From: Macrostomum lignano
Taxonomy: Eukaryota
Direction of reading: 5' to 3'
Length of the DNA: 64,000 nt
Assembly (NCBI GenBank): GCA_002269645.1
Contig: NIVC01001049.1
Location: 124,001 to 188,000 of the forward strand
The position numbers were made by a program, and so were the translations under genes. Positions within the stretch are counted from its first letter, which is position 1; each line of letters opens with the position of its first letter. Shown piece by piece: positions 1 through 58,149 of this stretch. Below the pieces are notes generated by a model, which did not search any database, was not told the DNA's origin, and saw nothing but the letters and a program-made list of their open reading frames with translations.

Positions 1-390
1 TAAAAAGATGGAAAAGCAAAAACAGTACATTATGATATCTGTTTTGGAAAAATTGCAAGATTTTTATATTTTCTATGCTAACTTTAATGGATTAAAACCA
101 CAGATACTAAAATAACTAGATAGGCCACTAAGGCATATATATTAAGTAAAACAGCTTTCTACTTTTAGTTCAATAGCAATAGCAAAGAAAGCATATATAA
201 GCTTATTGTATAAAAAAGGTGGCTGAAATGGCTTTGATAAGTTTAGAAGTCCAAGCTTGCAAGTATCAGCAACTTGCTAATTGGTTCAGCAATAATGTAT
301 ATTAGCCAGTCCACTAAAAATATATTTTTAGCAGCTTTATGTTAGAAGTCTAAAAAAGGCAATAATTGAATAAAAATTGAGGTAGGCAAG

Positions 391-686
391 CATACATGCG
401 CAACCTCCAAAATTCGGTCGGCCGTGCGACTTAGTTTTAACAAAAATGCGACGTAGTTTTTGGCCAAAAATGCGACTTGCATGTAAAAAAACCGTAAAGC
501 AAAATCAACGCAACTTTGGGTAAACGGCAGGAGTAACTATAACTTTCTTATTAAGCCAAAATGCCTCGTCAGCTATTTAGTACTACTACTTAGGTGTTTT
601 TGGGTGGGCATTTTTGCGACTTCCTTGGTTGGTCGCCAAATCGGTCGGCCGGATCGGCCGACTCGGCCGACTGTTGCGCATGAATG
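391..686. mobile_element. Non-autonomous TIR element (MITE) with 8-bp TSD, carrying a 28S rRNA-derived fragment
   Basis: TIRs CATACATGCGCAAC (391-404) and GTTGCGCATGAATG (673-686), 13/14 match; perfect TSD TAGGCAAG at 383-390 and 687-694; repeated GCGAC and CGGCCGA subterminal motifs. Confidence 0.85.
518..582 (+). pseudogene. Degenerate 28S (LSU) rRNA fragment, domain IV H69-H71 region (R2/I-PpoI target)
   Basis: GGGTAAACGGCAGGAGTAACTATAACTTTCTTATTAAGCCAAAATGCCTCGTCAGCTATTTAGT aligns by eye to conserved eukaryotic LSU GGGTAAACGGCGGGAGTAACTATGACTCTCTTAAGGTAGCCAAATGCCTCGTCATCTAATTAGT. Confidence 0.8.
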
Positions 687-934
687 TAGGCAAGTGGGGG
701 AGATTGAACATACTATTGAACTGAAAATAGCTTATACCCAAATGCTTAGGCCCTATCATATAAAGTATAAAAAGCATCATGTCAAAAAAGAAGTATCATG
801 TTTTAGTTATGTCAGTGTCATAACATAGTCATAGTCATGTCAAGTTTTAATAGTTTGAAAGGCAACATATATGCTAGGATTTCCTAGTATACAACAAGGG
901 TCTTACCATTTTTCAGCATATATCAGGATATATC

Positions 935-1231
935 TAGGCATTCCAATCCTAGGATCCCGGGATTTAGCCTCAAAACATGGGATTTCAATCTTGGGATTTT
1001 TTGGGACTTGAAATTTTAGGATTTATGATCCTTGGGATTACAACAGTGTGGGATTGCGATCCCGGGATTGTAAGGCTTAAATTCCAGGATTGTTTTGGGA
1101 TTCAAAGCGGGATCCCGGGATTACTCTCAGTTAGGATTTTCCGGGATTAGTGATCCCAGGATTTTAAACCATTGGGATTTTAGGATTTTTTAATCCCAGG
1201 ATTATAAATTGTCAGGATTTTGGAATCCCTA
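935..1231. mobile_element. hAT-like MITE
   Basis: Ends TAGGCATTCCA / TGGAATCCCTA (TAGGG-type TIR); perfect 8-bp TSD GATATATC at 927-934 and 1232-1239; many internal GGGATT/ATCCC(G)GGA motifs. Confidence 0.8.
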
Positions 1232-3294
1232 GATATATCCTGGCGTATATCCCTAGATACATTGTGTGTGTCAAATGCCATTTTTTGTATTGGCATATAA
1301 ACCTGGCATAAAAACAAGGTCTTATCATTTTTTCCAGCATTAAACCTGGCATATACTAATACACAATCCAAACTGTGGCCCAATTGTACTGAGTGGCCTA
1401 TCTAATTATTCTAGTATCTACACATGATTAACACTCATTAACAGGGCCCAACACTGAAGATATCAAAGCTTATAAAAAGGAATTATTACAATAGGATTTC
1501 TTTGGCTTTGATTTATGATCCTTTTTTCACCCACATTTTGGTGAAAAATTGATGATAATCCCTAAGTAATTTGCTACTTTAATGATCATGGCTTGCTCCA
1601 AATAAGCAAAAGTTAATAAACTAGGCCTAAGCTTATATGTTTCACTAGAAAAATTGAACAGAATAGTACCACTAAGCTAACCTAGTTTTTCCTCTGGCAT
1701 AGCAATGCATTGACTATCAAAAAATCCTAGCATACAAATGACCTTCTTCAAAGTTGGCATACATATTTCAGCATACAAATTATGCCAATTTTTAATGTAC
1801 GAATTTTGGCACACAAAAATACACAAATTTTGGAGAGCAGTACATTTTAACATAAATATTAACATATTTTCATAAAATTAAGAAAAAACTTAAAAGGCTA
1901 AAATATTCCTTATTATAGATAGCTTTACTTGAAATACTAAATTAAATAAAAACAAATCAAATTCAGGATAAATGGAACTGCTTCCAAAAAGTATGTATTA
2001 ATATTACATCTTGGATGCTTTGCTTGTTGTTTAAATGTACAGTCTACTAAATTAGCCATTGCGCAATTCTACGAAAGCTTGCATTTTGAAATCGTAAAGT
2101 ATTAAAACAAAGCACTTCTACTTTGTTTATCATGTACTAAATTACTCACACTAGCACACGAAAGCGCTGTCTGAATTATACTACCTAATTACATATAGAA
2201 AGCGCTACATGCACATTTCATTGCTAGAGCGACTAACGTAGGATGCAATCCTTCCAACACGAGATTAAATAATTCCTTCAGCTCGTTATGCTAGAATTAT
2301 AGCCATGTACCATAGTGCACATATATTCTCGTTATAAGGACACTTGTATACTTGCTTTTCGCACTCTCGTAAACTGTTTCAGTCACTGACTTGTATACAT
2401 TAACTTAATAAATGGTAAAGTTTTTTAAATATAGTATAGCATGATAAGCCGACGGTTGGAATAATTTTTTTAGTTTGTTGAATTTAAATTCAAATTGATG
2501 ACTAGTGAGTAGGTAGGTCATTACTTAACCGGTATGAGACGTGTTCCCGCAATCCAATAGTAAAAAAGCGAAGCCAGTGAAAGAAGCAGGCAAAACAGCC
2601 TGGGTTTTTATCTCTCACAATTCACTGCAGGCAGTGCAGTTAAGTTCAAGAGCTGACAAAAATTGCGGAAAAATACAGCGCACACTAACACCTGCTCTGG
2701 TCTATCTCATTGACTCCTCAATTCTGTCTGTCTTTCAGTTCTCTATCTCGCCAGCCAGGGCATCAAGCCGGATAAGCACTTGCGGCAGAATCAAGCAATT
2801 AATAATCGCATATGATTAATAAGAACACATCGGTTAGGGGAGGGGGCCAAGGGGCAGCGCAGAAATCCAAACGCAGGAAGCTGTAGTCGCGAGCTAATTA
2901 TAATATTATAATGTTATAAAAACTGGAAATGATCAGTTCAAGGAAGGAACGGGCATAGATGTTAATAAGCAGGCATTTTATCGAATAGTTTGTTGCAAAC
3001 AGAACAGCAAACCAAGCAACACTGCGTTAAAAAGACCCGCTAATGCCAGTTAAGAATGGGTGTTAATTACGTAAATAATAAAATAGTATAAAAAGCAAAA
3101 CAGGCAACTGTCGCACCCACCCCCAAAACGAACCGAAAATAAATGTGCTTGAGATGTAGAAATGTACTTTTCAACTCAGATAGCCGAATGGGGACTGGTT
3201 GGCTGAACTTACAAGCAAAACCCTGTTTGTGGACTGGCCTGGACACGCCGGGGGCACCGCCTTCACTCTGATGTTCAAATATTTAATCACAGCT

Positions 3295-4697: not shown

Positions 4698-5250
4698 TCA
4701 CTTCAGCGCCGGGAACTCGGCCGCGTCGTCGACGCGGATGTTCGCCGCCCTGGCGCCGGCGGCCGACTGCGGCGGTCCCGACGCGCGAGCACCGCTGGCG
4801 CCGGCGCCGCTTTCGCCTCCGCGCCCGCCGCGGCCGCCGCGACCGCCGCGACCACCGCGACCGCCGCCGCGACGACGGCCCTCGTCGAAATTGGCCTGCG
4901 GGTTGTTGACGTTCACGTAGAAGTTGGTCTCAACCTCCGGCTTCTTCACGATGAGCTGGGCGGCCGTGGCCTCGGCCTCCTCCTCGTCATCGGACTCCTC
5001 GTCGGCGATGCGCTGCTTCCTGTAGGCGGTCATCTCCTTGAAGCCGGAGGTGTCCACCTTGCGGCCGGCTTTGCCAGCGTTGGCCTGCAGCTTCGAGCGG
5101 TCCTCGGCCTGCTGGCGGCGCCACTCCTCCAGCGTCATCATGGCCTTGGGCGCCGGCTGGTCCTCGCCAGCGGCCTCCTGGTCCACGGCCTCGGCCCAGT
5201 CCTCCTTCACGGCCGGCTCGGCTGGGGCGGCTCCGTCCTGCAGCTGCTCC
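4698..5250 (-). CDS. SERBP1: SERBP1/Vig/HABP4 family mRNA- and ribosome-binding protein, exon 3 (last coding)
   Basis: Acceptor CCACAG at 5251, phase 2 matches exon 2. Encodes MTLEEWRRQQ, RGG repeats and C-terminal DDAAEFPALK, typical HABP4_PAI-RBP1 family motifs. Stop at 4698-4700. Confidence 0.9.
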
Positions 5251-5657
5251 CTGTGGTGGAATATACAGTGCAAATATAATAATATAATAATAGTGCAAAG
5301 CTCAACTGCAATCGCATACTACTAACAGTAGAGTCACTGCCATAGGCTCAAAACTTGTATACTTTTCTTGCAGCTTTCACTAGAGGGGAACTGCATTGCT
5401 GCGGTCCAGACGGAACAGAGGGGAGAGAAGAGGATAGAGGGTTTGAAAGCCGAGAGAAGAAGTTAAAAGTGAGAGACGACGATGAGAGGAGAGATGCGAA
5501 GGCGCAATCCCTGAACGGGCCAGATAGAGAGGCTTTGCGGGCCGGAGTTTGCCGACCCCTGCTTTATTAAAGCCTCTAAAAATGTATCCAATTTAACGTG
5601 TTTTATCCTATACGCGTCTCTCTGCTTTCAAAGAGGACCGAACGCCTGCGGACTCAC

Positions 5658-6399
5658 TCGAGGTCGTCCTTGACGGTGCCCCAGTTGTGAGCGCCGGCGC
5701 CCTCGCGCTTATCGACGGGTTTCACGCCGGTGGTGGCCGAGCCCGAGTGCCGCTCGTATTCGCGACCGCGGCCGCGCTGGGCTCCGCCGGCGCCGCCGAA
5801 GCCGCCGCGACCGCCGCGTCCACCGCGACCGAAGCCGCCGCGTCCGCGGCCGCGCGGCCTGCCGTCCTCGCCGACAGCCGGAGCTCCGGTCTCCTCGTCG
5901 CCGGTCACCTCGGCGGCGCTGCCGGCGTCGGCGGGCGCCTCCCGGTTGGCAGCAAAGCCGCCAAAGCCACCGCGGCCGCGACCGCGACCACCAAAGCCGC
6001 CGCCTTGCGGGCGATCCTCGCCGGCGCCGCCCTCCTCGCCGCCAGCGGATTCGCCGCGCGGTCCGCTAAAGCCGCCGCCGCGGCCGCGTCCAAAACCGCC
6101 GCGACCTTCGCCGAAGCCGCCACGTCCGCGACCGCGACCTTCGCCGCCGCCAAAGCCGCTGCGACCCTCGCCGCCGCCAAAGCCGCCGCGACCCTCGCCG
6201 CCGCGCCCGCGGCCCCGGCCACCGAAGCCGCCACGGCCGCCTTCGCCAGCCTCGCCGCCAGCGTCGCCAGTGGACGGCCGGGAGCCACCGAAGCCGCCGC
6301 GACCGCCGCCGCCGCCGCCGCGCCCGAAGCCGCGGGGCCGATCCTGGGCGCCAGCCTCTCCACCCGAGGGCTCGTTGAATCGCGGGATGGCGCTGCGAT
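5658..6399 (-). CDS. SERBP1: SERBP1/Vig/HABP4 family protein, exon 2 (long RGG/GGFG region plus conserved core)
   Basis: Acceptor GACAG at 6400, donor GTGAGT at 5657. Contains [36 protein letters not shown], the family hallmark. 742 nt, phase 1 to 2. Confidence 0.9.
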
Positions 6400-6474
6400 C
6401 TGTCAGGCGGATAAGATTGATGCCAATGCAAGCAGTTGCACTTTTACAATCGCAGCGATGTGATCTTAGAAGAG

Positions 6475-6697
6475 TGTGTTAAGTAGTTGAAGGATGTGTT
6501 AAGTAGTTGAAGGATGTGTTAAGTAGTTGAAGAATGTGTTAAGTAGTTGAAGAATGTGTTAAGTAGCAGAAGGATGTTAAGTAGAAGGATGTGTTAAGTA
6601 GTTGAAGGATGTGTTAAGTAGCAGAAGCATGTGTTAAGTAGCAGAAGCATGTGTTAAGTAGCAGAAGGATGTGTTAAGTAGCAGAAGGATGTGTTTA
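6475..6697. repeat. ~20-bp minisatellite (GAAGGATGTGTTAAGTAGTT) at the 3' end of SERBP1 intron 1
   Basis: Visible tandem array of about 11 units. Confidence 0.9.
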
Positions 6698-7589
6698 GCC
6701 CAGCAGGATTATTGGCACAGAATAACTATATAGGAATTAAATATTCCATAATTAAAATAATGGCAAGTGTTAGCACCAATATAAATTGTGCAGATTAAAG
6801 CAGTACATGAAATTGTCAGTGCAATAAGATATTAATATATTATTTACTACTTTGAACTAATACTAATTTACTAAGTATTAATAATTCCATGTGCATATAA
6901 CAATATTACTCATCTAGTGTATGCAATATAATTGTGCTTGGCCATAGGTAGAATTTTTATAGTTAAAACAGGTATGTTTTCCCAAATCACTTCCAATAAA
7001 ATAGAGTATATTCAATATAAAATAAAAAACTATTAACCAAATTTAAATACTTATTATCTTTGAATTTAAATGGCTCACAAAATTTTAATATTTAAATTTA
7101 TGATTTGTATAAACTATTTAATTTTTACTAAAAGGAAAAGAACAAGTTTATTTTAACAATTTTTATTTTTTACATTTAACTTCTTAGAACAGTTGAACAA
7201 ATTTTTTTAATATTTTTTTGTTAAGCTAATCTTTATTTATCAAAACTTAGCTACATTAACTATGTATATTGAGAGTGTGCCAAACTTGAACTTGAGAATT
7301 TTTGTACACCAATTGTATACATTGATTGGGACTTGGAGCTTTGGTCCCATCTACTATCTCAGAAATCTCTATATGCGAAGTTGCATATTAAAGGGTATGC
7401 CAGGCCCCTATAGTCCAGATCATACTGGGTGCATATGGAACTAAAATTGAATAGTTACAAATGCATGCCAAAAATAAGTGCTTGCCCACACTTTCAAATC
7501 TAGGCCAATGTTGAAACAATAAATGACTTTTTTGCATTGCAACAATATATAACTTTTTTGTATTGCATAAAAGACACTTTTCGCTAATA

Positions 7590-8768
7590 TGAGGGGTGTC
7601 CCAAAAGTTGGTGCACTTTTTTCACTACAGCCTTTTCTGACTGATCAGAAATATCAAGTCTGTTGCAGTTGAAAATAGAATTATCTGCCCATTAAAATGA
7701 CTTTCTCTTTATTTCTGTATCTGCTAGCATTCTTAAGATATGAGCACTTTTTTGCCCCACCCCCTGTGCTACTTTTACAAATTGCCATAGACCAAAGCTT
7801 TGTATCTGATGCATGAAACAACAAAACATTCATTGAATCAACAAAACATCTGCAACATGAAAGCTGAGGAAAGAACAGTCAAAGTTAATCATCAACATTG
7901 TCCTGGGGCTTCTCCATATAGTCATTACTGTGCTGCACACTTCTGCCATTGGCTGTGCATGTTGTCAATGGCATCAGCAATAGCATAGACAAATTCAGGC
8001 ATTGCTTGACACTGATGCCAGACTGACAGTTTGTGAGATTGCAGATATGCTCAGCAGTCCAAAGTCCACTGTTCCACTGCACAATGACTGAGGATTTAGA
8101 ACTGTCAAAGATCTTGGCCCACTAGGTACTGCGGATCCATACATTCTATGCCACAACAATGCATATCCCACATGGCCAAGAAAACAGAGGAGACAATTGA
8201 GCAGACAAATTTTGTGCTGCTCTCATTGCCACCCTACTCTCCAGATTTGTCAACAGCTGACTGCATTCTTTCCTAAGAGGAAGAAGCTGCTGCATGGATG
8301 AATCTTTGCTTGTCATGGGAGCATGGAAGCATTGACTTGCCAAGTTCTCCTTCATGAGATGCTGCACTCAGATTTTGCTGGTTGATGACATTGACAACAT
8401 GCATAGCCAATGACAGAAGTGTGCAGCACAGTAATGACTATATGGAGAAGCCCCAGGACAATGTTGATGATTAACTTTGACTGTTCTTTCCTCAGCTTTC
8501 ATGTTGCAGATGTTTTGTTGATTCAATGAATGTTTTGTTGTTTCATGCATCAGATACAAAGCTTTGGTCTATGGCAATTTGTAAAAGTAGCACAGGGGGT
8601 GGGGCAAAAAAGTGCTCATATCTCAAGAATGCCAGCAGATACAAAAATAAACAGAAAGTCATTTTAATTGGCAGATAATTCTTTTTTAACTGCAACAGAC
8701 TTGATATTTCTGATCGGTCAGAAAAGGCTATAGTGAAGAAAGTGCACCAACTTTTGGGACACCCCTTG
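7590..8768. mobile_element. Mariner-derived fold-back element with degenerate transposase N-terminal remnant
   Basis: TA-flanked ends (T/C)GAGGGGTGTCCCAAAAGTTGGTGCAC / GTGCACCAACTTTTGGGACACCCCTTG-TA. Inverted arms ~390 bp (identical ORFs 7800+ and 8559-). Middle reads, with shifts, IDKFR..DARLTVCEIADMLS..TEDLELSKILAH*VLR, like the mariner HTH and WVPR linker. Confidence 0.85.
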
Positions 8769-8940
8769 TAATTTGGTTGCTTATTTTTCTTTTTTGTCAA
8801 TATTACTTTAAGTAGAAAATCAATATGCACAAACATTTGTTTAAATGCCTCATTATAAGCTTAAAAATAGAAAGCTTGAAATTTACATTAAAAAAGAACT
8901 TTTTCAACTTTTTCTACTTAACACTAAACTCTTCCATACG

Positions 8941-9717
8941 ATTCTATGAAGTACACACTAGGTGTATATATACTATTTTCTTAGGAGCCAACTATATATG
9001 CCTAACTTTTGGTATACAAAGCCAATGCTTGCCCAAATTTTTGGGTATATTACATGATCCAGAATGTAGCCAGGCCTTTTTGTATACCAATTTGTATGCC
9101 AATGATGTATACCTGATCTCTTTGCATATCAGAAAATCCTGGCATATATGTATACTATTTAGAGTCTGGTATATATTAAAACTAATATATTATTTTTGGT
9201 ATAGTAAATATATGAAAAGGCATATAATGGATCATTCCACAAGAGGGTCCCATCATGTTTTTGAACTTAAAGCACTTGTAACTTTTAAACCATAATAGAT
9301 GGAACAAAGCTTCAAGTATCAGTCTGTGTCAAACTTCTAGTTTTATATATTTCACATAGCTGCTTATGAATTCTAAACAACTGAACACATATCAGAGGCA
9401 TAAACTATGCTGATGGTCATCTAACAAGTTACAAGTGCTTAAAGTTCAAAAACATAATGGGACCTTTTCGTAGAATGACCCTAATAAATATCATTATAGC
9501 ATGCTTATGCCACTTTTTAGCATGAAATCTAAGCACAGATAGGCAATTTCAAGGTTTTTTTACTCTAAATGCAATAATTATTCCACACTCCAGATAATAT
9601 ATCCAAAAATTTGGGCAAGCATTGGCCTTGCATGCCAAAAGTAGGTATGCACAGTTGATATGCACCACTCCTAAGAAAAAAGTGTATGTGCACACTTGGC
9701 ATGCACCTTATAGAACA
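8941..9717. mobile_element. Older inverted-repeat element (arms ~8941-9060 and ~9585-9717) with nested MITE
   Basis: AAAGCCAATGCTTGCCCAAATTTTTGG (~9018) mirrored by CCAAAAATTTGGGCAAGCATTGGCC (~9603); TTTTCTTAGGAG mirrored by CTCCTAAGAAAA. Confidence 0.6.
9229..9481. mobile_element. MITE with ~60-bp TIRs
   Basis: GGATCATTCCACAAGAGGGTCCCATCATGTTTTTGAACTTAAAGCACTTGTAAC mirrored by GTTACAAGTGCTTAAAGTTCAAAAACATAATGGGACCTTTTCGTAGAATGACCC; TAAT on both flanks. Confidence 0.75.
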
Positions 9718-10573
9718 AATTATTAGCTAAAAAGGGTCCATTACAAAACTTGTATAGATTTAAAAGAGTAAGTGTGTACTAAATTTTTTGGTGTGCATTT
9801 GTAATTATTCACTTTTTGTTTAGGTATGCACCGCACCTAGCATGATCTAGACTATGTTAATTATTTGGGTATTTCTACCAAAATAGAACACAAAGTGTCC
9901 ACCTTAAAACTGAAAAAATATAAGTACTGCAAAACTTTATTAGACAAATACAAATAATACAACAGCAATCATGACATCTACAAAAAGCACAAAAAATGCT
10001 TTATAGTGAAGTATTAAATTGTTAAATAGCTATAAATGTTCTTAAACAACATTTAATACCATACAAATTAAAAAAAAAGATGTTGCAAAGGCGATACTTA
10101 TAGGCTTCAATCAACTTTTACAATTACAATATACATATATGTAGTTTGGATGTTTTATAATTTTTGATAGAAAATGATTAATTTAAAAGACGAATAAGTA
10201 TAAAAAGGTCTATATGACTGCTTAACATTTTTCAATGTGAAAAAATGTCTTAGATATGTTATTGACTCTGACATTCATTGTCAAACTAATTTCTCAACAA
10301 TGCAATATGCTAGAAAAGCAACAAACCACTTATTAGAAAGCTTAGAATGAGTCGATTCATTTAATGAAAAATTGGTCCTTACACATTGTATGTTAGATAC
10401 TTTCGGGTTTTGTAGAAACATTTTCAATGTGATATGGTTGTTTCAGGTATAATTTGACTAATTTTTAGCAATGCAATATGTTCAAAAAACAACCTCAACA
10501 CTTATTACAAAGCTTGGACACAGGGTTTTTTTGTCTATAACTTAGGTGTGATTTCGCACCCTATGCTAGATTT

Positions 10574-10852
10574 CCCTATTGCAGCGCATGGCTTAAGTAC
10601 GCCAGACGCCTACACAACCTGCGCCACGCTGTGAAATGACTTACCTGTGAAAGAAACCCTAAAGCAAAATTAACGCAGTTTTAGGTAAACGGCAGGAGTA
10701 ACTATGACTGTCTTATCAAGCCTAAATGCCTCGGCATCTAATTAGTACCACGCCGCGCCATACTAATTGCTGCGCGCTGTATGCGCCGCGCCGCGCTGTA
10801 TTAGATCTGCGCCGGACGCCGTCCGCCAAAATGCCCATGCGCTGCAATCAGG
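10574..10852. mobile_element. Second MITE with 8-bp TSD, different TIRs, same 28S-derived cargo
   Basis: TIRs CCCTATTGCAGCGCATGG / CCATGCGCTGCAATCAGG (16/18); perfect TSD CTAGATTT at 10566-10573 and 10853-10860. Confidence 0.85.
10684..10746 (+). pseudogene. Degenerate 28S rRNA fragment (R2/I-PpoI target region), copy 2
   Basis: GGTAAACGGCAGGAGTAACTATGACTGTCTTATCAAGCCTAAATGCCTCGGCATCTAATTAGT; matches the LSU consensus apart from three substitutions and the altered AAGGT core. Confidence 0.85.
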
Positions 10853-11165
10853 CTAGATTTTAGGGTCCGATTTTCAAGACCAGGATGCACTGCATTGCTG
10901 CAAACCAAAACTGGTCTAACACTAATAGTGTGTTTCAAATTACTGGCTAATTCTAAGAATATGAAGTTACAGACTTAAGATGTCCATAACACTAAATTGT
11001 GAAATCTGCATCTCATCCTTGCAAAAAATTCTGGTGCACTTTTCGCACCTTGAGTAAAATTTCAGGGTGCAATTTTTAAGAACAAGATGCTATTTGCACC
11101 CATTTGCACAAAAAAAACCAGGCTTGGAATGTCTAGATTAATGTAATAAAAACTTGGCTTTCTAT

Positions 11166-11882
11166 TAGTGATGGATCAAAATTATTTTTCAAATCAAAAT
11201 TGAAATTTTTGGTTCTTTAGAATCAAAATTGAAATTGAAATTGAAATTTTTTAGCTTAACAAATTTTTACTTTTTTGCTAATCATGCAAAAAGGTTAACA
11301 CCTTGCCTTTGCATGTATGAGCTTACATGTTGTATAAAAAGTATCTTTGATATGTTTAAACCAGAATACTTAAGATTCAACTTACTTTAAAAATATGAAA
11401 TAGAAAATGCTGGTGTACTGTGTATTATACACTCGTATATAGAAATATAATAGAAGTTGTATTATACTTCACCACTGTTTAAGCTGAAGATCTAGATATG
11501 AGTAGCCTATATCCATTTCATTAAGGCTTTAAGTCTTTAGCCAATTAAAATCCACGCCAATGAGTTTAGCCAGTGGGCTTGTAGAGGTTGAGGTGGGTGC
11601 AGCACAAGGCCTGGAACAGTGTGTGCCTTGCATAATATTTCTTGTAGAAAAGGCAATTCTCACCTCCCCACTGAGTCTTTAAACCGCACCTCCTTTCATT
11701 TCCTATAGATTTTCTTTCTCATGTAGCATGATCATCAATGTCTAAATTGTTAAAATATAACCAAAACTTTGAAATGATTTTTGATTAATAGTGTCAAAAT
11801 TCAAAATTGAAATTATTTTAATGCAAAATTAGTTTCAAAATTCGGAATATCAAAATTGACATCGAATTTTGATCCATCACTA
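11166..11882. mobile_element. hAT-like non-autonomous element
   Basis: TIRs TAGTGATGGATCAAAATT / AATTTTGATCCATCACTA; TSD CTTTCTAT (11158-11165) / CTTTCTAC (11883-11890); repeated CAAAATTGAAATT subterminal motifs. Confidence 0.8.
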
Positions 11883-14181
11883 CTTTCTACATTCTATATG
11901 TTGGGTACTCTAGGTAGATACTTATTCTCATGCTATCCTAGTTTGACTTGGCAATTAACTCATGTTATAACTATATGATTTAGATTTACAAATGAAAAGT
12001 TATAAAAACTATAATGTATTTTCTTTCATTTGAAAAAAACTTTGCCTTTAAAATCAATTTAAACTTTGAAAAACAGGAAAATGCAATTAGAAATAAAAGC
12101 AAAATATACTTGCTCAAGAAAGTGTATTTAGAAGCTAAAATAGTAAAAATTGCATGCAAATGAAAGCAGGCAGTTTAAAAAAATAGTTAAACTTTGCTAA
12201 ATGAAATGCATTTAAAAACACACTTTATTATGCTTTCAAAGATATGCCTAAAACTTATGAAGTTGAAATCTGTGAGGGCAGATATCCACAAAATTTCTGG
12301 GTTAGACAACATTAAAACATTTTAGAGTTTGTCATTATATATTTTTCTAATAAGTGTTACTTTTATTGCATAAAAACCAAAATGGTTTCATCTAAAAGCA
12401 TGACTTTAATATTTAATTAGTCTACCTTAAAATATTTTTTTAATTTGTTAGGCTTAATTTTCTTGCTATCTTATTTTTGTAGAATTACCCCTTAGCTAAC
12501 TTGCAAAAGTCAACTTTTTAATGTTTATCTCCTTTCATAATTTATCTAACTAGGGACTTCAGTGAGTTATAAGAAGTGCGTGCCAATGGCAAAAAAGTAA
12601 GAAAAAAGTCCAATTTTTCAAGGGCGATTTTAAAGAAACTATAGAAGCCAGGATGAAAGTAAAATATGCATTTAAAAGGTAAAAAGGAGCTCTTTCAAAT
12701 GACACCAACTGCAAGTCTAGCTTTGTTATACTTTTTGCACTGTCTATTTTTAAAGTTGACCATTTTTTAGGAGGAATATAAAATTGAAGCCAAAATGAAT
12801 AAAAAAACAGTGGTTCAGAAAATGCTTTTTCTTAGCTGCAATGTGTTTCTTATAATGGAAACAAAGGTTTTATAGTGTAAAGGGATAATTTAGAAACATT
12901 TTTCTGGTGTTAAAAAAAATTTTTTTTTCTTTTAATGCCCATATGGCTCTATGCAAAATTTCAAATTCAAAATTTTCCATGAAATCCTTTTCCTGCATTG
13001 TTTCTCTTTATATTTTTCATTACCTATTGAAAATACAAGCACAGTAAAAAAAACCGCTTGCCAATAGCTATAGGCGCAAAAATTTTGTGGAGGTTTCTTT
13101 TTTTGATACGTTTACATGTAAAATACCCATTGAAACGTGTATTTCGTGTTTTTTGTGAGACTCTGCCTTCCGGCAAACTAGTTCTCTGTGTCATTTAACT
13201 AATTCTGCTATGCTGAACACGATAGACAAAACCGTTTTTTAATAAACCCATGCGCAAAGCCTGTACAGCACATTACATTGCAGTTGGGGTGTCTGTCATG
13301 CATTAAAAATTTAGGGCAAGAAGTAGAATAGTATTATAGTAGGTAAAAACCTGAACAAAATGACACTAGCCTTGTATAAATTAAGCAAGCAGAACAGATG
13401 CTATTGTATTTTTAAAATTGCAATCATTGCGTATCTGGTTAAAATAGTCAAAATTTCATACACCCATCCTGTTTCAATTAGCTTAGCAACTTGGGCATAT
13501 AAAATAATATTAAAATATATAATTCATACAATTAACACTAAAAAACTGAACAAAATGACACCAAGCACAGTCATTTTGGTTGGCTAGAAAATTAATTACA
13601 AGTGTTCAAAGACAAAAAGCCAACTTTTTGGCCAAAAATGATCACAAACCGTAATGTAAAAATTCCATTGGCTAAAGGCACAAATCGGGGTTACTAAAAT
13701 AGCTGTAGTTTCCTTATTACTCAACCAAATCACTAAAGTTTGGCCATTTTGGAAATGGGAAAGTAAGATCTATCTAGTGAAATAGCAGCCTATAACAATT
13801 TCTGAAATTTAATTTTCTCACTGAAGTGCCTAATCTAACTGCTGCTTCCAAAGTAAAGTATACTAATGTTATACCTTGTTGTAGTATTGTTAATGTTAGA
13901 CCCTAAAAAGCCTATCTTAAGCTAATAAGCCTAAGGCCAAACATAAATATAATATAAAGAATAAAGTTTAAATGTTAATGCCAAGATGATACAAAAGTCA
14001 AAGATAAAATGCAATAGGAAAATATCATGAGGCTAGATTCATAAAATTTATATATTTTTAAATATAATAAAAACTGACTTCAAAACAAGAAAAGTCTTAT
14101 TATTATTTTACTAAAGCTAAAGGTGATATAGGGCCTATAACAAAATAATATTTAAATTAAGAAAAGATTCTATTAACATAC

Positions 14182-14431
14182 TGTCCTGCTGGCCTTGTCG
14201 TTCTCTCCTTGGTTTTTTCGCCCCCGATTGATCTGCTGAGTCAGTCTTAGCAGCCTGCTTCACATCTTCTGGCTTAGCGGCCTTTGGATCTTTTTTCTTC
14301 TTTTGCTTAGATTTTTCACCCTTCTCAGCCAGTGCTGCCTGGAGGATTTCATCAGGATCTTCCACGTCGTCCAGTAGGAAACCAAACTTGTTTCCAGTGA
14401 CAACGGTGTAACTACTTTCCACTTCAGTCAT
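14182..14431 (-). CDS. SERBP1: SERBP1/Vig/HABP4 family protein, exon 1
   Basis: MTEVESSYTVVTGNKFGFLLDDVEDPDEILQAA resembles the family N-terminus (V.NRF..L.DDE.DP.E.L). Donor GTATGT at 14181, phase 1 matches exon 2. Full model 1545 nt, 514 aa. Confidence 0.8.
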
Positions 14432-20290: not shown

Positions 20291-23240
<2,950 letters not shown>

Positions 23241-23364
23241 CTGCGTCTGCTGGACCAGTGGGAAAGTTTTCCCCACGCTATTAACAGCTTGAGATGAGCA
23301 AATAACTTTTGTCTGACGCATCTGGAATTTTTTCTTATCTGACCTCTGACCCCCCCCTCGGCGT

Positions 23365-24904: not shown

Positions 24905-25540
24905 CCCGTGAGGGCCAACCCCAGCGCCCGTGGCCCCCATCCCCATCGCCCTTGTCACCACTCGGATCAACCAGTGGGTGGCTTCTAAGCACAGGGAGAG
25001 GTGGGCCAACGCCCCCGACTGCCAGCAATCCCGCGCGGCTGTCCCCTGTCCCTCCTCCGCCCTACGCAGGGCCCTGCTTGGACTCAACCTTAACCGCAGG
25101 GACATCAGGGCGGTGACCATGGCCCTCTCGGGTCATGGCTGCTTTGCCAGGCATCGTTACCTCCAGGAGAAAATCCGCAGTGAGGAATGCCCTTTCTGCC
25201 TCTCCGGTGTCGAGAATGCGGAGCACTTCATCTGTGAATGCCCCGCCTTTACTCAGGACAGGCTCACCTACCTCGGCCCAAACCCGGACCTCTCCGACGT
25301 TTTCAGGCCCGAGAATCTCTGCCAGCTCGTCCGCTACCTAAGGGCTACTGGGCGAGCGAACATCCACCTCCTGGACTCTCCGGAGGGGGACCGCGCTGCG
25401 GACGCCGGCACCACCGGAACTCCCTGCGCGACACCGCAGCACTAGCTGCCCGTGGTCGCCAGGGGTTAGCGAAATGGGCGGCAACGCCTCCTCGCTGTTT
25501 CCGGACGCTGCAGGGAGCCCCCTGCAGCTAAGTCAAGTAA
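24905..25540 (+). mobile_element. 5'-truncated non-LTR retrotransposon 3' end (C-terminal zinc knuckle; I/R1/LOA-group-like)
   Basis: ORF 24930-25445: [42 protein letters not shown] (C-x2-C..E..EH...C.CP), typical of the ORF2 C-terminus after RNase H. Ends near GCTAAGTCAAGTAAG. No RT domain present. Confidence 0.8.
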
Positions 25541-56577: not shown

Positions 56578-58149
56578 ATGAGTCACGGGCTGTTCCAGTG
56601 TCTTTCACCCGCCAAGGAGGAGGGCGACGCGGCCCAGGCAGCCGACGGCCGGCCCCGCCGCCGGCCACAGCAGCGCCGCTCCAGGTCTGTAGTGTCCGTG
56701 TTGTTGTCGCTTTTCCGCTCCGAGTCGTCCGACTCGCCGGCCGCGGACACGAAGGACTCGGCGACGGCGGCGGCGACGGGGACGACCGCAGCCTCGGCAA
56801 CCGCGGCAGCTGGCGGCTCAGAGCGACGCCGACGGCACCACTCAGCGGGGTCCGGCAAGCCGCCGCACTCTCGGATGAAGCTGAAGCGGGAGCGCTGCCC
56901 CAAGTGCCACGGCGTGCTGCCGCTGAAGACCCCGGATCTGGAGCCCGTGCTGGTGCGGCCTGGGCAGGCCAGGCGGCGTCACGAAATCAAGGAGGATTCC
57001 GGATGTATCATTGCGGTCGAGGTGAGCTGGTGAACTGACTGACTTGAGTGAGTGAGTGGCTGACTGACTGACTGACTGACTGACTGACTGACTGACTGAC
57101 TGACTGACTGACTGACTGACTGACTGACTGACTGACTTGAGTGAGTGAGTGGCTGACTGACTGACTGACTGACTGACTGACTGACTGACTGACTGACTGA
57201 CTGACTGACTGACTGACTGACTGACTGACTGACTGACTGACTGACTGACTGACTGACTGACTGACTGACTGACTGACTGACTGACTGACTGACTGACTGA
57301 CTGACTGACTGACTGACTGACTGACTGACTGACTGACTGACTGACTGACTGACTGACTGACTGACTGACTGACTGACTGACTGACTGACTGACTGACTGA
57401 CTGACTGACTGACTGACTGACTGACTGACTGACTGACTGACTGACTGACTGACTGACTGACTGACTGACTGACTGACTGACTGACTGACTGACTGACTGA
57501 CTGACTGACTGACTGACTGACTGACTGACTGACTGACTGACTGACTGACTGACTGACTGACTGACTGACTGACTGACTGACTGACTGACTGACTGACTGA
57601 CTGACTGACTGACTGACTGACTGACTGACTGACTGACTGACTGACTGACTGACTGACTGACTGACTGACTGACTGACTGACTGACTGACTGACTGACTGA
57701 CTGACTGACTGACTGACTGATTGACTGATTGACTGACTGACTGACTGACTGACTGACTGACTGACTGACTGACTGACTGACTGACTGACTGGTAGCTTTG
57801 CTCCCTTTGCTGGGGTCCTTGGTCAGTGAGTTGGGGTGGACCTACCCCTTCCAGTCTTCACTATGCCCTTAATGTCTCGTCAGCTAATTAGAAACTTCTC
57901 AACTCGAAATTTCAGTCCCGAAGAGCCGCTGATGGCGCCCGCCCGGCAGCCGTCAGCTGCCCGGAGGACTCGGGTAACTTCAGCATGAGCTCAGGCGCTG
58001 GCAGCAGCACCCGGCAACCGGAGCCACCGCTGCCGCTGGCCCGGCCGCCGATGTCCGGCCTCTACGGCACCGGGTTCTCCACCTGCGTGCCGCGAATCCC
58101 CAACCGAGACGCGCCAGTGAGCAACAACTGCCTCCCAATTCGCGGCTGA
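56578..58149 (+). CDS. Uncharacterised ~225-aa low-complexity protein, exons 56578-57021 and 57916-58149
   Basis: ATG, GC-rich open frame, donor GAG|GTGAGC, acceptor TTTCAG, phase 0 match, second exon open to TGA. One CxxC (RCPKCHG). No family recognised. Confidence 0.55.
57035..57790. repeat. (ACTG)n microsatellite, reverse complement of the 53731-55011 array
   Basis: Visible; interruption CTTGAGTGAGTGAGTGG. Confidence 0.95.

What the first reader, a model, noticed from the sequence alone, without database searches (positions are those of the whole stretch)
10566..10860. A second, different MITE carries the same ~95-bp 28S-containing cassette
Seen: 10 kb away, in SERBP1 intron 1, a 279-bp element with different TIRs (CCTGATTGCAGCGCATGG), its own perfect 8-bp TSD (CTAGATTT) and different subterminal motifs (GCGCC rather than GCGAC). 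It shares only the internal cassette AAACC(G/C)TAAAGCAAAAT(C/T)AACGCA(A/G)(C/T)TTT(G/A)GGTAAACGGCAGGAGTAACTAT...TAGTAC, including the G>A change (GGCAGG) and the non-rRNA 5' leader. Inference: the cassette was captured once and then kept or swapped between two TIR families. A conserved cargo inside otherwise diverged wrappers suggests a function, such as a decoy or landing site for R2-type elements or nucleases, a structured RNA, or a source of anti-R2 small RNAs.
Basis: partly seen in the sequence, partly recalled or inferred. Interest (0 to 1): 0.85.

Follow-up and report, generated by a model that had tools for sequence, protein, structure and literature searches.

The report
Two MITE families sharing one 28S-derived insert
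A 279-bp non-coding DNA transposon in intron 1 of a SERBP1-like gene carries a decayed piece of 28S ribosomal DNA that also sits in a differently-ended transposon 10 kb away; it looks like a passenger passed between two transposon families, with no sign of a function.

Summary
Window 10574-10852 is a 279-bp element with 18-nt terminal inverted repeats (16/18, 14-nt perfect core) and a perfect 8-bp target duplication (CTAGATTT). It lies in intron 1 of a SERBP1/HABP4-family gene on the minus strand.

It shares a 114-bp segment (85% identity, E 2e-31; about 125-130 bp with one indel) with a second element at 391-686. That element has different ends, a different target duplication and different subterminal motifs. 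The arms do not align in any orientation.

The shared segment matches eukaryotic 28S rRNA around the R2 insertion site (Rfam LSU positions 2200-2314, E 6e-4). Most differences from 28S are common to both copies, so the fragment was acquired once and then moved between families.

The functional ideas are not supported:
- The R2 nick site is the most altered part of the core.
- The H69 and H71 helices are partly broken.
- Folding is no better than for shuffled sequence.
- Neither copy is interrupted by an insertion.

Both elements are CpG-rich in CpG-depleted DNA, so they look young. No further copies could be retrieved, so family-wide tests remain undone. This is a modest new variant of host-sequence capture by DNA transposons.

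The parts
10566..10573 (.). E2 left target-site duplication CTAGATTT
   Evidence: Perfect 8-nt direct repeat abutting the left inverted repeat
10574..10591 (+). E2 left terminal inverted repeat CCCTATTGCAGCGCATGG
   Evidence: 16/18 complementary to 10835-10852, with a 14-nt perfect core. No other copy in the window
10592..10637 (+). E2 left arm with GACGCC / GCGCC motifs
   Evidence: Motif counts. No similarity to the E1 arms
10638..10768 (+). E2 copy of the shared module. The blastn core is 10638-10751; a weaker extension with a 12-nt indel runs to about 10768
   Evidence: 114 bp at 85% identity to 474-586, E 2.5e-31. Alignments
10684..10748 (+). 28S-like core (GGTAAACGGCAGGAG...TAATTAGTAC), covering the equivalents of helices H69-H71. 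It is sense on the + strand, so antisense to the host gene
   Evidence: cmscan LSU_rRNA_eukarya positions 2200-2314, 24.3 bits, E 6e-4. 81.5% identity to real 28S genes
10710..10722 (+). Altered equivalent of the R2 / I-PpoI / Pokey site: GTCTTATCAAGCC where 28S has CTCTTAAGGTAGCC
   Evidence: This is the cluster of shared derived changes
10769..10834 (+). E2 right arm: CpG-rich, with GCGCC x4, CGCGCTGTAT x2, and GCCAAAATGCC abutting the TIR
10835..10852 (-). E2 right terminal inverted repeat (reverse complement CCTGATTGCAGCGCATGG)
10853..10860 (.). E2 right target-site duplication CTAGATTT
383..694 (+). Partner element E1 with its duplications (TAGGCAAG at 383-390 and 687-694). TIRs at 391-404 and 673-686. 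Tandem subterminal repeats R1-R3 at 425-492
474..596 (+). E1 copy of the shared module (28S-like core 519-583)
6400..14181 (-). Intron 1 of the SERBP1/HABP4-family gene, which hosts E2. GT donor after 14182; AG acceptor at 6401-6400
   Evidence: Pfam IHABP4_N on exon 1

Best explanation
E2 (10574-10852) and E1 (391-686) are young, non-coding cut-and-paste DNA transposons (MITEs) of the 8-bp-duplication type. That type is most like hAT and possibly P-like. They belong to two families with different terminal repeats and different subterminal motifs.

Both carry one internal module of about 115-130 bp. Most of it is a decayed fragment of the large-subunit rRNA gene, roughly Rfam LSU positions 2212-2314, spanning the R2 / I-PpoI / Pokey insertion hotspot.

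The fragment entered a transposon once. The likely route is template switching during repair of an excision gap, the Pack-TIR route; this step is inferred. The module was later copied from a member of one family into a member of the other by the same kind of template switch or by recombination (also inferred). The 5' edge of the module overlaps a unit of E1's own subterminal repeat (AAATGCGACTT), which E2 has once, exactly at that edge (AAATG-ACTT). This mildly favours an E1-type donor.

The module behaves as a passenger. It has lost the R2 nick site and some rRNA pairings, it shows no fold signal, and it is evolving at 11-20% divergence between families.
For: Anatomy:
- TIRs and perfect 8-bp duplications for both elements.
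- No room for a transposase in 279 or 296 bp.

Two families:
- Arms unalignable in all orientations.
- Mutually exclusive motifs.
- Each TIR occurs only at its own element.

One module:
- 114 bp at 85% identity, E 2.5e-31.

28S origin:
- cmscan E 6e-4 to LSU 2200-2314.
- The 22-mer GGTAAACGGCAGGAGTAACTAT is exact in 46 real 28S loci.
- 78-82% identity over 65 columns.

Single acquisition:
- 7 shared derived columns in the core, against 3 E1-only, 1 E2-only and 3 columns where both copies differ from 28S in different ways.
- 15 shared derived columns in the leader.
- Identical module edges.

Passenger status:
- R2 site destroyed.
- Helices partly broken.
- Fold z-scores between -0.2 and +1.6.

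Youth:
- CpG observed/expected is 1.43 (E1) and 1.26 (E2), against 0.11-0.29 in the surrounding intron and 0.51 around E1.
- Intact duplications.

Edge overlap with the E1 repeat array:
- R1-R3 are tandem repeats (p < 2e-4).
- E2 10635-10657 is homologous to R3 (p = 0.001).

Mechanism precedent:
- Gap-filling and template-switch capture by hAT and other TIR elements in animals (PMC8277862).
Against: - Only one copy of each family could be examined. Copy number, family consensus and cassette-free members are unknown.
- No transposase partner was seen, so the superfamily assignment rests on duplication length alone. E2's ends (CCCTA / CCTGA) do not fit the usual hAT 5'-YARNG.
- A short motif, GCCAAA(A)ATGC, recurs in the arms of both families and in the cassette.
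- E1's right terminus (GCGCATGAATG) equals the 28S bases that directly follow the captured stretch.
- These last two points hint that the arms and the cargo may be less independent than a simple passenger model assumes.
Confidence: 0.62

Rival explanations
1. The elements were built from rDNA-derived sequence and did not capture it as cargo. Under this reading the arms and ends also contain scraps of the same 28S stretch, and the two families descend from one rDNA-born ancestor whose termini were remodelled.
For: - E1's right terminus GCGCATGAATG is an 11/11 match to the 28S bases that immediately follow the captured stretch, in the same orientation.
- GGTCGCCAAAT in E1's right arm matches 28S GGTAGCCAAAT. 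Colinear alignment gives p = 0.0006 against shuffles.
- E2's left arm CTTAAGTACGCCAGACGCCT resembles 28S CTTAAGGTAGCCAAATGCCT, nominal p = 0.04.
- The motif GCCAAA(A)ATGC has 5 of its 11 window hits inside the two elements, which make up 0.9% of the window.
- Both TIRs contain GCGCATG.
Against: - Against real 28S windows the E1 right-arm alignment is unexceptional: score 30.5 against a 99th percentile of 35.4.
- Arms against the whole 28S are not significant.
- All of these matches were found post hoc and are short.
- Pooled arm-to-arm similarity gives p = 0.19.
Confidence: 0.15
2. The cassette is a separate small mobile element, such as a 28S-derived SINE or another MITE, that inserted independently into one member of each family.
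For: - Sharp edges of homology inside otherwise unrelated sequence.
- 28S-derived SINEs are known (SINE28, listed in PMC10946416).
Against: - The shared segment has no inverted ends, no A-rich or simple 3' tail, and no flanking direct repeats of its own in E2.
- No free-standing copy exists in the 64 kb.
- It sits at nearly the same relative position and in the same orientation in both elements.
Confidence: 0.08
3. The cassette is a conserved functional cargo. Candidates are an R2 decoy or landing site, a structured RNA, a source of anti-R2 small RNAs, or an extra transposase-binding site.
For: - It is the only part conserved between two otherwise different elements.
- Blocks of 22-26 nt remain near-identical to 28S.
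- Its GCCAAAATGCC stretch resembles the arm motif of both families.
Against: - The R2 nick site is replaced in both copies.
- The copies keep different pairs of the H69 and H71 equivalents, and neither helix is intact in both.
- No thermodynamic signal on either strand.
- No interruption of either copy.
- 11-20% divergence spread over the whole module.
Confidence: 0.07
4. The two families captured the same 28S stretch independently.
For: This part of 28S turns up outside an rDNA context in several unrelated metagenome contigs (L004, L010, L015, L034, L037), so it does get dispersed.
Against: - Most differences from 28S are shared.
- The edges are the same.
- Both copies share 5' nucleotides matching E1's subterminal repeat.
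Confidence: 0.04
5. E1 and E2 are diverged copies of one family under uniform neutral decay.
For: Similar size, the same duplication length, the same cassette position and orientation, and GCGCATG in both TIRs.
Against: - The arms are at chance similarity while the cassette is 85% identical.
- The arms are CpG-rich and their TIRs are intact, so they are not decayed.
Confidence: 0.02

Closest known systems
Pack-TIR / Pack-MULE type capture of host DNA by non-autonomous TIR transposons (gap filling with template switching; Tan et al. 2021, PMC8277862)
   Same: A host-derived fragment lies between functional-looking ends of a small TIR element. hAT is the commonest carrier in animals, and multicopy cases have distinct target duplications.
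   Different: - The captured piece is a fragment of the 28S rRNA gene, not of a protein-coding gene.
- It occurs in two families with different ends.
- The parental locus and the junction microhomology could not be established here.
hAT-type MITEs (8-bp target duplication, short TIRs, subterminal repeats)
   Same: 8-bp duplications, 14-18-nt TIRs, arrays of short subterminal motifs, 279-296 bp, non-coding.
   Different: E2's termini (CCCTA / CCTGA) do not match the usual hAT start. No transposase partner was identified. P-like elements also make 8-bp duplications.
TEs with rDNA-derived modules: SINE28 (28S), SINE3 / Cassandra / Ajax (5S promoter), Pokey / mPok (IGS repeats); review PMC10946416
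   Same: A piece of ribosomal DNA has become part of a mobile element.
   Different: - Table 2 of the review lists no TIR element carrying a 28S fragment.
- The 5S cases have a clear use (a Pol III promoter). No use is apparent here.
28S insertion hotspot used by R2, I-PpoI-type introns and Pokey (PMC5035012, PMC3849761)
   Same: The cassette spans exactly this stretch of 28S (…CTCTTAAGG|TAGCCAAATGCC…).
   Different: The site itself is mutated in both copies. The elements are not inserted in rDNA, and their target duplications are unrelated to 28S.

Membership tests
MITE (non-autonomous TIR transposon) | Terminal inverted repeats | tested here: met
   E2 16/18 with a 14-nt perfect core; E1 13/14
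MITE (non-autonomous TIR transposon) | Target-site duplication directly flanking the TIRs | tested here: met
   Perfect 8-bp repeats: CTAGATTT (E2) and TAGGCAAG (E1)
MITE (non-autonomous TIR transposon) | Small size without coding capacity | tested here: met
   279 and 296 bp. Only short spurious ORFs overlap E1's edge
MITE (non-autonomous TIR transposon) | Many homogeneous copies in the genome | not testable with these tools
   One copy of each TIR type in 64 kb. The genome is not in any searchable collection
hAT superfamily | 8-bp target duplication | tested here: met
   An 8-bp reading keeps the TIRs in register better than a 9-bp reading
hAT superfamily | TIR starting 5'-YARNG and duplication consensus nTnnnnAn (from my own knowledge of the family) | tested here: not met
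   E2 starts CCCTA / CCTGA and E1 starts CATAC / CATTC. Each duplication fits only one half of nTnnnnAn
hAT superfamily | Related autonomous element encoding a hAT transposase with matching ends | not testable with these tools
   No transposase ORF in the window
Eukaryotic LSU (28S) rRNA fragment | Sequence and structure match to the LSU model | tested here: met
   E2: RF02543 positions 2200-2314, 24.3 bits, E 6e-4. This is below the 50-bit gathering score, as expected for a 115-nt decayed fragment. E1: 10.5 bits. Core identity to real 28S genes is 78-82%
R2 target site | Intact TTAAGG|TAGCCAAATGCC around the nick | tested here: not met
   TTATTAAGCCAAAATGCC (E1) and TTATCAAGCCTAAATGCC (E2)
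R2 target site | R2-type insertion present in a copy | tested here: not met
   Both copies are uninterrupted. Only two copies were seen
Structured RNA retaining H69-H71 | Helices kept, with compensatory changes and a stable fold | tested here: not met
   H69 5/6 and 4/6 pairs; H71 2/6 and 4/6 pairs. z-scores +1.6, 0.0, +1.3, -0.2. Two sequences cannot give a covariation test
Pack-TIR (captured host DNA) | Host-derived fragment between the ends of a TIR element | tested here: met
Pack-TIR (captured host DNA) | Identified parental locus and microhomology at the capture junctions | tested here: inconclusive
   Host rDNA is not in the window. The left edge shows AAATG(CG)ACTT shared between E1 and E2. 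The right edge is not resolvable

The most novel reading that the evidence does not exclude
The 28S-derived module is kept in at least two active MITE families because it helps the elements. One possibility is that its GCCAAAATGCC stretch mimics the subterminal motif found in the arms of both families and so adds a transposase-binding site. Another is that it ties the elements to rDNA / R2 biology, as a decoy or as a small-RNA source antisense to 28S-R2 co-transcripts.
Probability: 0.08. Interest if true: 0.65.

Novelty: new variant of a known kind. Interest (0 to 1): 0.3.

Why it matters
If the passenger reading is right, this is a clean small example of two things. The first is capture of ribosomal DNA by a cut-and-paste transposon; the 2024 review of rDNA-TE links (PMC10946416) lists no TIR element with a 28S fragment. 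The second is module exchange between MITE families, which bears on how new MITE families arise. It also has a practical side: dispersed 28S-like pieces of this kind can be mis-scored as rDNA or as R2 target sites in genome annotation and FISH. It would matter more only if genome-wide data showed selection on the cassette.

Tried and rejected
1. More copies.
- Exact and degenerate cassette patterns against metagenome, viral and prokaryote-genome contigs gave either real 28S genes only (46 loci, some with R2-type insertions) or nothing.
- The TIRs and arms have no other copy in the window.

2. Organism and extra loci through proteins.
- Two protein searches with the SERBP1-like last exon found no close relative.
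- The source organism stays unidentified.

3. Literature.
- No paper describes a 28S-bearing MITE, and none contains these sequences.
- The lamprey Germ1 lead was tangential.

4. A third cassette copy at 57867-57891. This is only a 25-nt resemblance (blastn E 0.015-0.05) with no cmscan support. Rejected.

5. The arms as a second 28S copy. Significant against shuffles (p = 0.0006) but unexceptional against real 28S windows. Kept only as a hint.

6. Arm-to-arm homology. A 13/14 match gives nominal p = 0.006 but pooled p = 0.19.

7. piggyBac / Pokey affinity, suggested by E2's CCCTA start. Rejected because the duplication is 8 bp and not TTAA.

8. Resemblance of metagenome contig L034 to E1's arms. 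It proved to be microsatellite low complexity.

Full report
**What is at the coordinates**

Window 10566-10860 holds a 279-bp element, E2 (10574-10852). It has terminal inverted repeats CCCTATTGCAGCGCATGG / CCTGATTGCAGCGCATGG (16/18, with a 14-nt perfect core). It is bracketed by a perfect 8-bp direct repeat, CTAGATTT. The TIR motif occurs only at these two places in the 64 kb.

The element lies in intron 1 (14181..6400, minus strand) of a SERBP1/HABP4-family gene. I mapped the exons at 14431..14182, 6399..5658 and 5250..4698. Pfam IHABP4_N matches exon 1 (E 2e-11) and HABP4_PAI-RBP1 matches the last exon. The 28S-like insert is sense on the + strand, so it is antisense to the gene.

**The partner element and the shared segment**

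The 22-mer GGTAAACGGCAGGAGTAACTAT occurs twice in the window, at 519 and 10684; none is expected by chance.

The first occurrence is inside E1 (391-686, 296 bp). E1 has the target duplication TAGGCAAG, the ends CATACATGCGCAAC / CATTCATGCGCAAC, and its own subterminal architecture:
- three tandem 22-24-nt units headed by TGCGAC (425-492);
- TCGGTCGGCCG repeats on both arms.

blastn aligns E1 474-586 with E2 10638-10751: 114 bp, 85.1% identity, E 2.5e-31. With one 12-nt indel the similarity runs on for about ten more bases.

Outside this segment the elements do not align. Local alignment of every arm pairing and orientation against shuffles gives p = 0.19-0.84, except for one 13/14 match with nominal p = 0.006. 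The pooled test gives p = 0.19.

Motifs are mutually exclusive. GCGAC and TCGGCCG occur only in E1. GCGCC, GACGCC and CGCGCTGTAT occur only in E2.

**What the shared segment is**

Rfam's eukaryotic LSU model matches E2 10638-10753 at model positions 2200-2314 (24.3 bits, E 6e-4 for that search). It matches E1 529-583 more weakly (10.5 bits).

I aligned both copies with ten real 28S genes retrieved from metagenomes. The 65-column core (GGTAAACGG…TAGTAC) is 78-82% identical to 28S and 89% identical between E1 and E2. This core covers the equivalents of helices H69-H71 and the site used by R2, I-PpoI-type introns and Pokey (family knowledge; PMC5035012, PMC3849761).

The so-called non-rRNA leader is mixed.
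- Its 26 nt next to the core are colinear with 28S: p about 0.001 for E1 and 0.09-0.15 for E2.
- Its first bases overlap the head of E1's third subterminal repeat unit.
- E2 has a matching AAATG-ACTT exactly at that edge.

GGCAGG is the native sequence of many real 28S genes. It cannot be called a mutation without the host's rDNA.

**One acquisition or two**

Among core columns where the reference 28S genes agree, the counts are as follows:

| State | Columns |
|---|---|
| Unchanged in both copies | 48 |
| Changed identically in both | 7 |
| Changed in E1 only | 3 |
| Changed in E2 only | 1 |
| Changed differently in the two copies | 3 |

The shared changes cluster at the R2 nick site (28S TTAAGGTAGCC becomes TTATTAAGCC / TTATCAAGCC) and at GTGAC→GTAC. 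The leader adds 15 more shared changes. Together with identical segment edges, this points to a single, already altered ancestor of both cassettes. It argues against two captures from functional rDNA. The caveat is that the host's 28S is unknown.

**Age**

The surrounding intron is strongly CpG-depleted (observed/expected 0.11-0.29; 0.51 around E1). The elements have 1.43 (E1) and 1.26 (E2), and their target duplications are perfect. Both insertions therefore look recent. The 15% difference between the cassettes reflects older divergence between the two families' source copies.

**Tests of function**

- The R2 target is destroyed in both copies, and neither copy is interrupted.
- Mapping the rRNA pairs onto the copies shows partial loss: H69 keeps 5/6 and 4/6 pairs, H71 keeps 2/6 and 4/6, and the upstream helices keep 8-11/13 and 3/5.
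- Folding either strand of either copy is no more stable than shuffled sequence: z = +1.6, 0.0, +1.3 and -0.2.
- Divergence between the copies is spread over the core (7/65) and the leader (9/46) alike.
- Nothing supports a decoy, a landing pad or a structured RNA. Small-RNA production cannot be tested here.

**Most likely history**

The shown steps are:
- two MITE families with 8-bp duplications;
- one shared module of single origin;
- a mainly 28S-derived module;
- module decay.

The inferred steps are as follows. The 28S piece entered a transposon by template switching during gap repair, as documented for hAT and other TIR elements in animals (PMC8277862). The module then moved between families by the same process or by recombination. 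An E1-type element is mildly favoured as donor, because the module's edge carries part of E1's repeat unit.

The superfamily is unresolved. The 8-bp duplication fits hAT or P-like elements. The E2 termini do not fit the usual hAT start, and no transposase is present in the window.

**Loose ends**

- E1's right terminus, GCGCATGAATG, equals the eleven 28S bases that directly follow the captured stretch, in the same orientation.
- The motif GCCAAA(A)ATGC has 5 of its 11 window hits inside the two elements. The hits include arms of both families and the cassette position just 3' of the R2 nick.
- E1's right arm aligns colinearly with that 28S stretch against shuffles (p = 0.0006) but not against real 28S windows.

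These hints leave room, at about 15%, for a different origin: the elements were built from rDNA-derived sequence and the families are related by descent.

**Limits**

No further copies could be obtained. The metagenome scan returned only genuine 28S genes. Viral and prokaryote-genome scans returned nothing. Protein searches and contig look-ups gave no access to the source genome. The literature search found no description of such an element. The 2024 review table of rDNA-derived TE sequences lists no TIR element with 28S content. Repbase could not be consulted, so novelty is provisional.

**Verdict**

The 'captured once, shared between two TIR families' inference is supported. The functional speculation is not. 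This is a modest new variant of host-sequence capture and module exchange by MITEs. Interest is about 0.3.

Noticed in passing
window 673-686 (E1 right end): The terminal 11 nt, GCGCATGAATG, are identical to the 28S bases that directly follow the stretch captured in the cassette (…TAATTAGTGAC|GCGCATGAATGG). They are in the same orientation as the cassette.
   Followed up: partly
window 463-473, 554-564, 608-617(-), 10720-10729, 10824-10834: The motif GCCAAA(A)ATGC has 5 of its 11 window hits inside the two elements. It occurs in arms of both families and in both cassettes, where it is the 28S sequence just 3' of the R2 nick.
   Followed up: partly
window 6500-14100 versus 391-686 and 10574-10852: The intron DNA is extremely CpG-depleted (observed/expected 0.11-0.29) while the two elements are CpG-rich (1.26-1.43). 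This implies heavy CpG decay in the host and recent arrival of the elements.
   Followed up: yes
window 7592-7976 and 8383-8766: A large inverted repeat (arms of about 385 nt, 95-97% complementary, about 400 nt apart) lies in the same intron. It is a foldback-like or long-TIR element of about 1.17 kb.
   Followed up: no
window 924-1242, 9005-9642, 9229-9481, 11166-11882, 102-1419: Several other MITE-like inverted-repeat pairs are present, for example a 23-nt TIR CAGGATATATCTAGGCATTCCAA and a 27-nt TIR TAGTGATGGATCAAAATT…. The AT-rich first 16 kb is dense in small TIR elements.
   Followed up: no
window 16000-64000: The composition changes abruptly from about 30-40% GC to 50-69% GC. The GC-rich part has very abundant tetranucleotide and minisatellite arrays: (CTGT)n, (GACT)n, (CAGT)n-type repeats, and repeats of about 75 bp at 16.3-17.0 kb.
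   Followed up: no
window 24930-25445 (+): This ORF contains a CPFC…H…C motif. By eye it resembles the C-terminal zinc knuckle of non-LTR retrotransposon ORF2 proteins. There was no Pfam hit at E <= 0.01.
   Followed up: partly
window 22843-23292 (+): This ORF has a Fibrinogen_C domain (Pfam E 4.8e-14). It is probably an exon of a fibrinogen-related gene.
   Followed up: partly
window 57867-57891: A 25-nt stretch, TAATGTCTCGTCAGCTAATTAG, resembles the cassette's 3' part, including E1's CAGCTA variant. blastn E is 0.015-0.05 and cmscan gives no support. It is probably chance or a tiny relic.
   Followed up: yes
loci L004, L010, L015, L034, L037; also L001, L003, L013, L018, L027, L028, L045: In unrelated metagenome contigs, the same 28S stretch occurs as short fragments outside an rDNA context. 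Some are tandemly repeated (L010, L037). In others, 28S genes are interrupted exactly at the R2 site.
   Followed up: partly
window 4698-14431 (-): The last exon of the SERBP1-like protein has no close relative in the protein database: the best hit is 43% identity over 40% of the query, and nothing was found for the non-repetitive part. The source organism could not be identified.
   Followed up: partly
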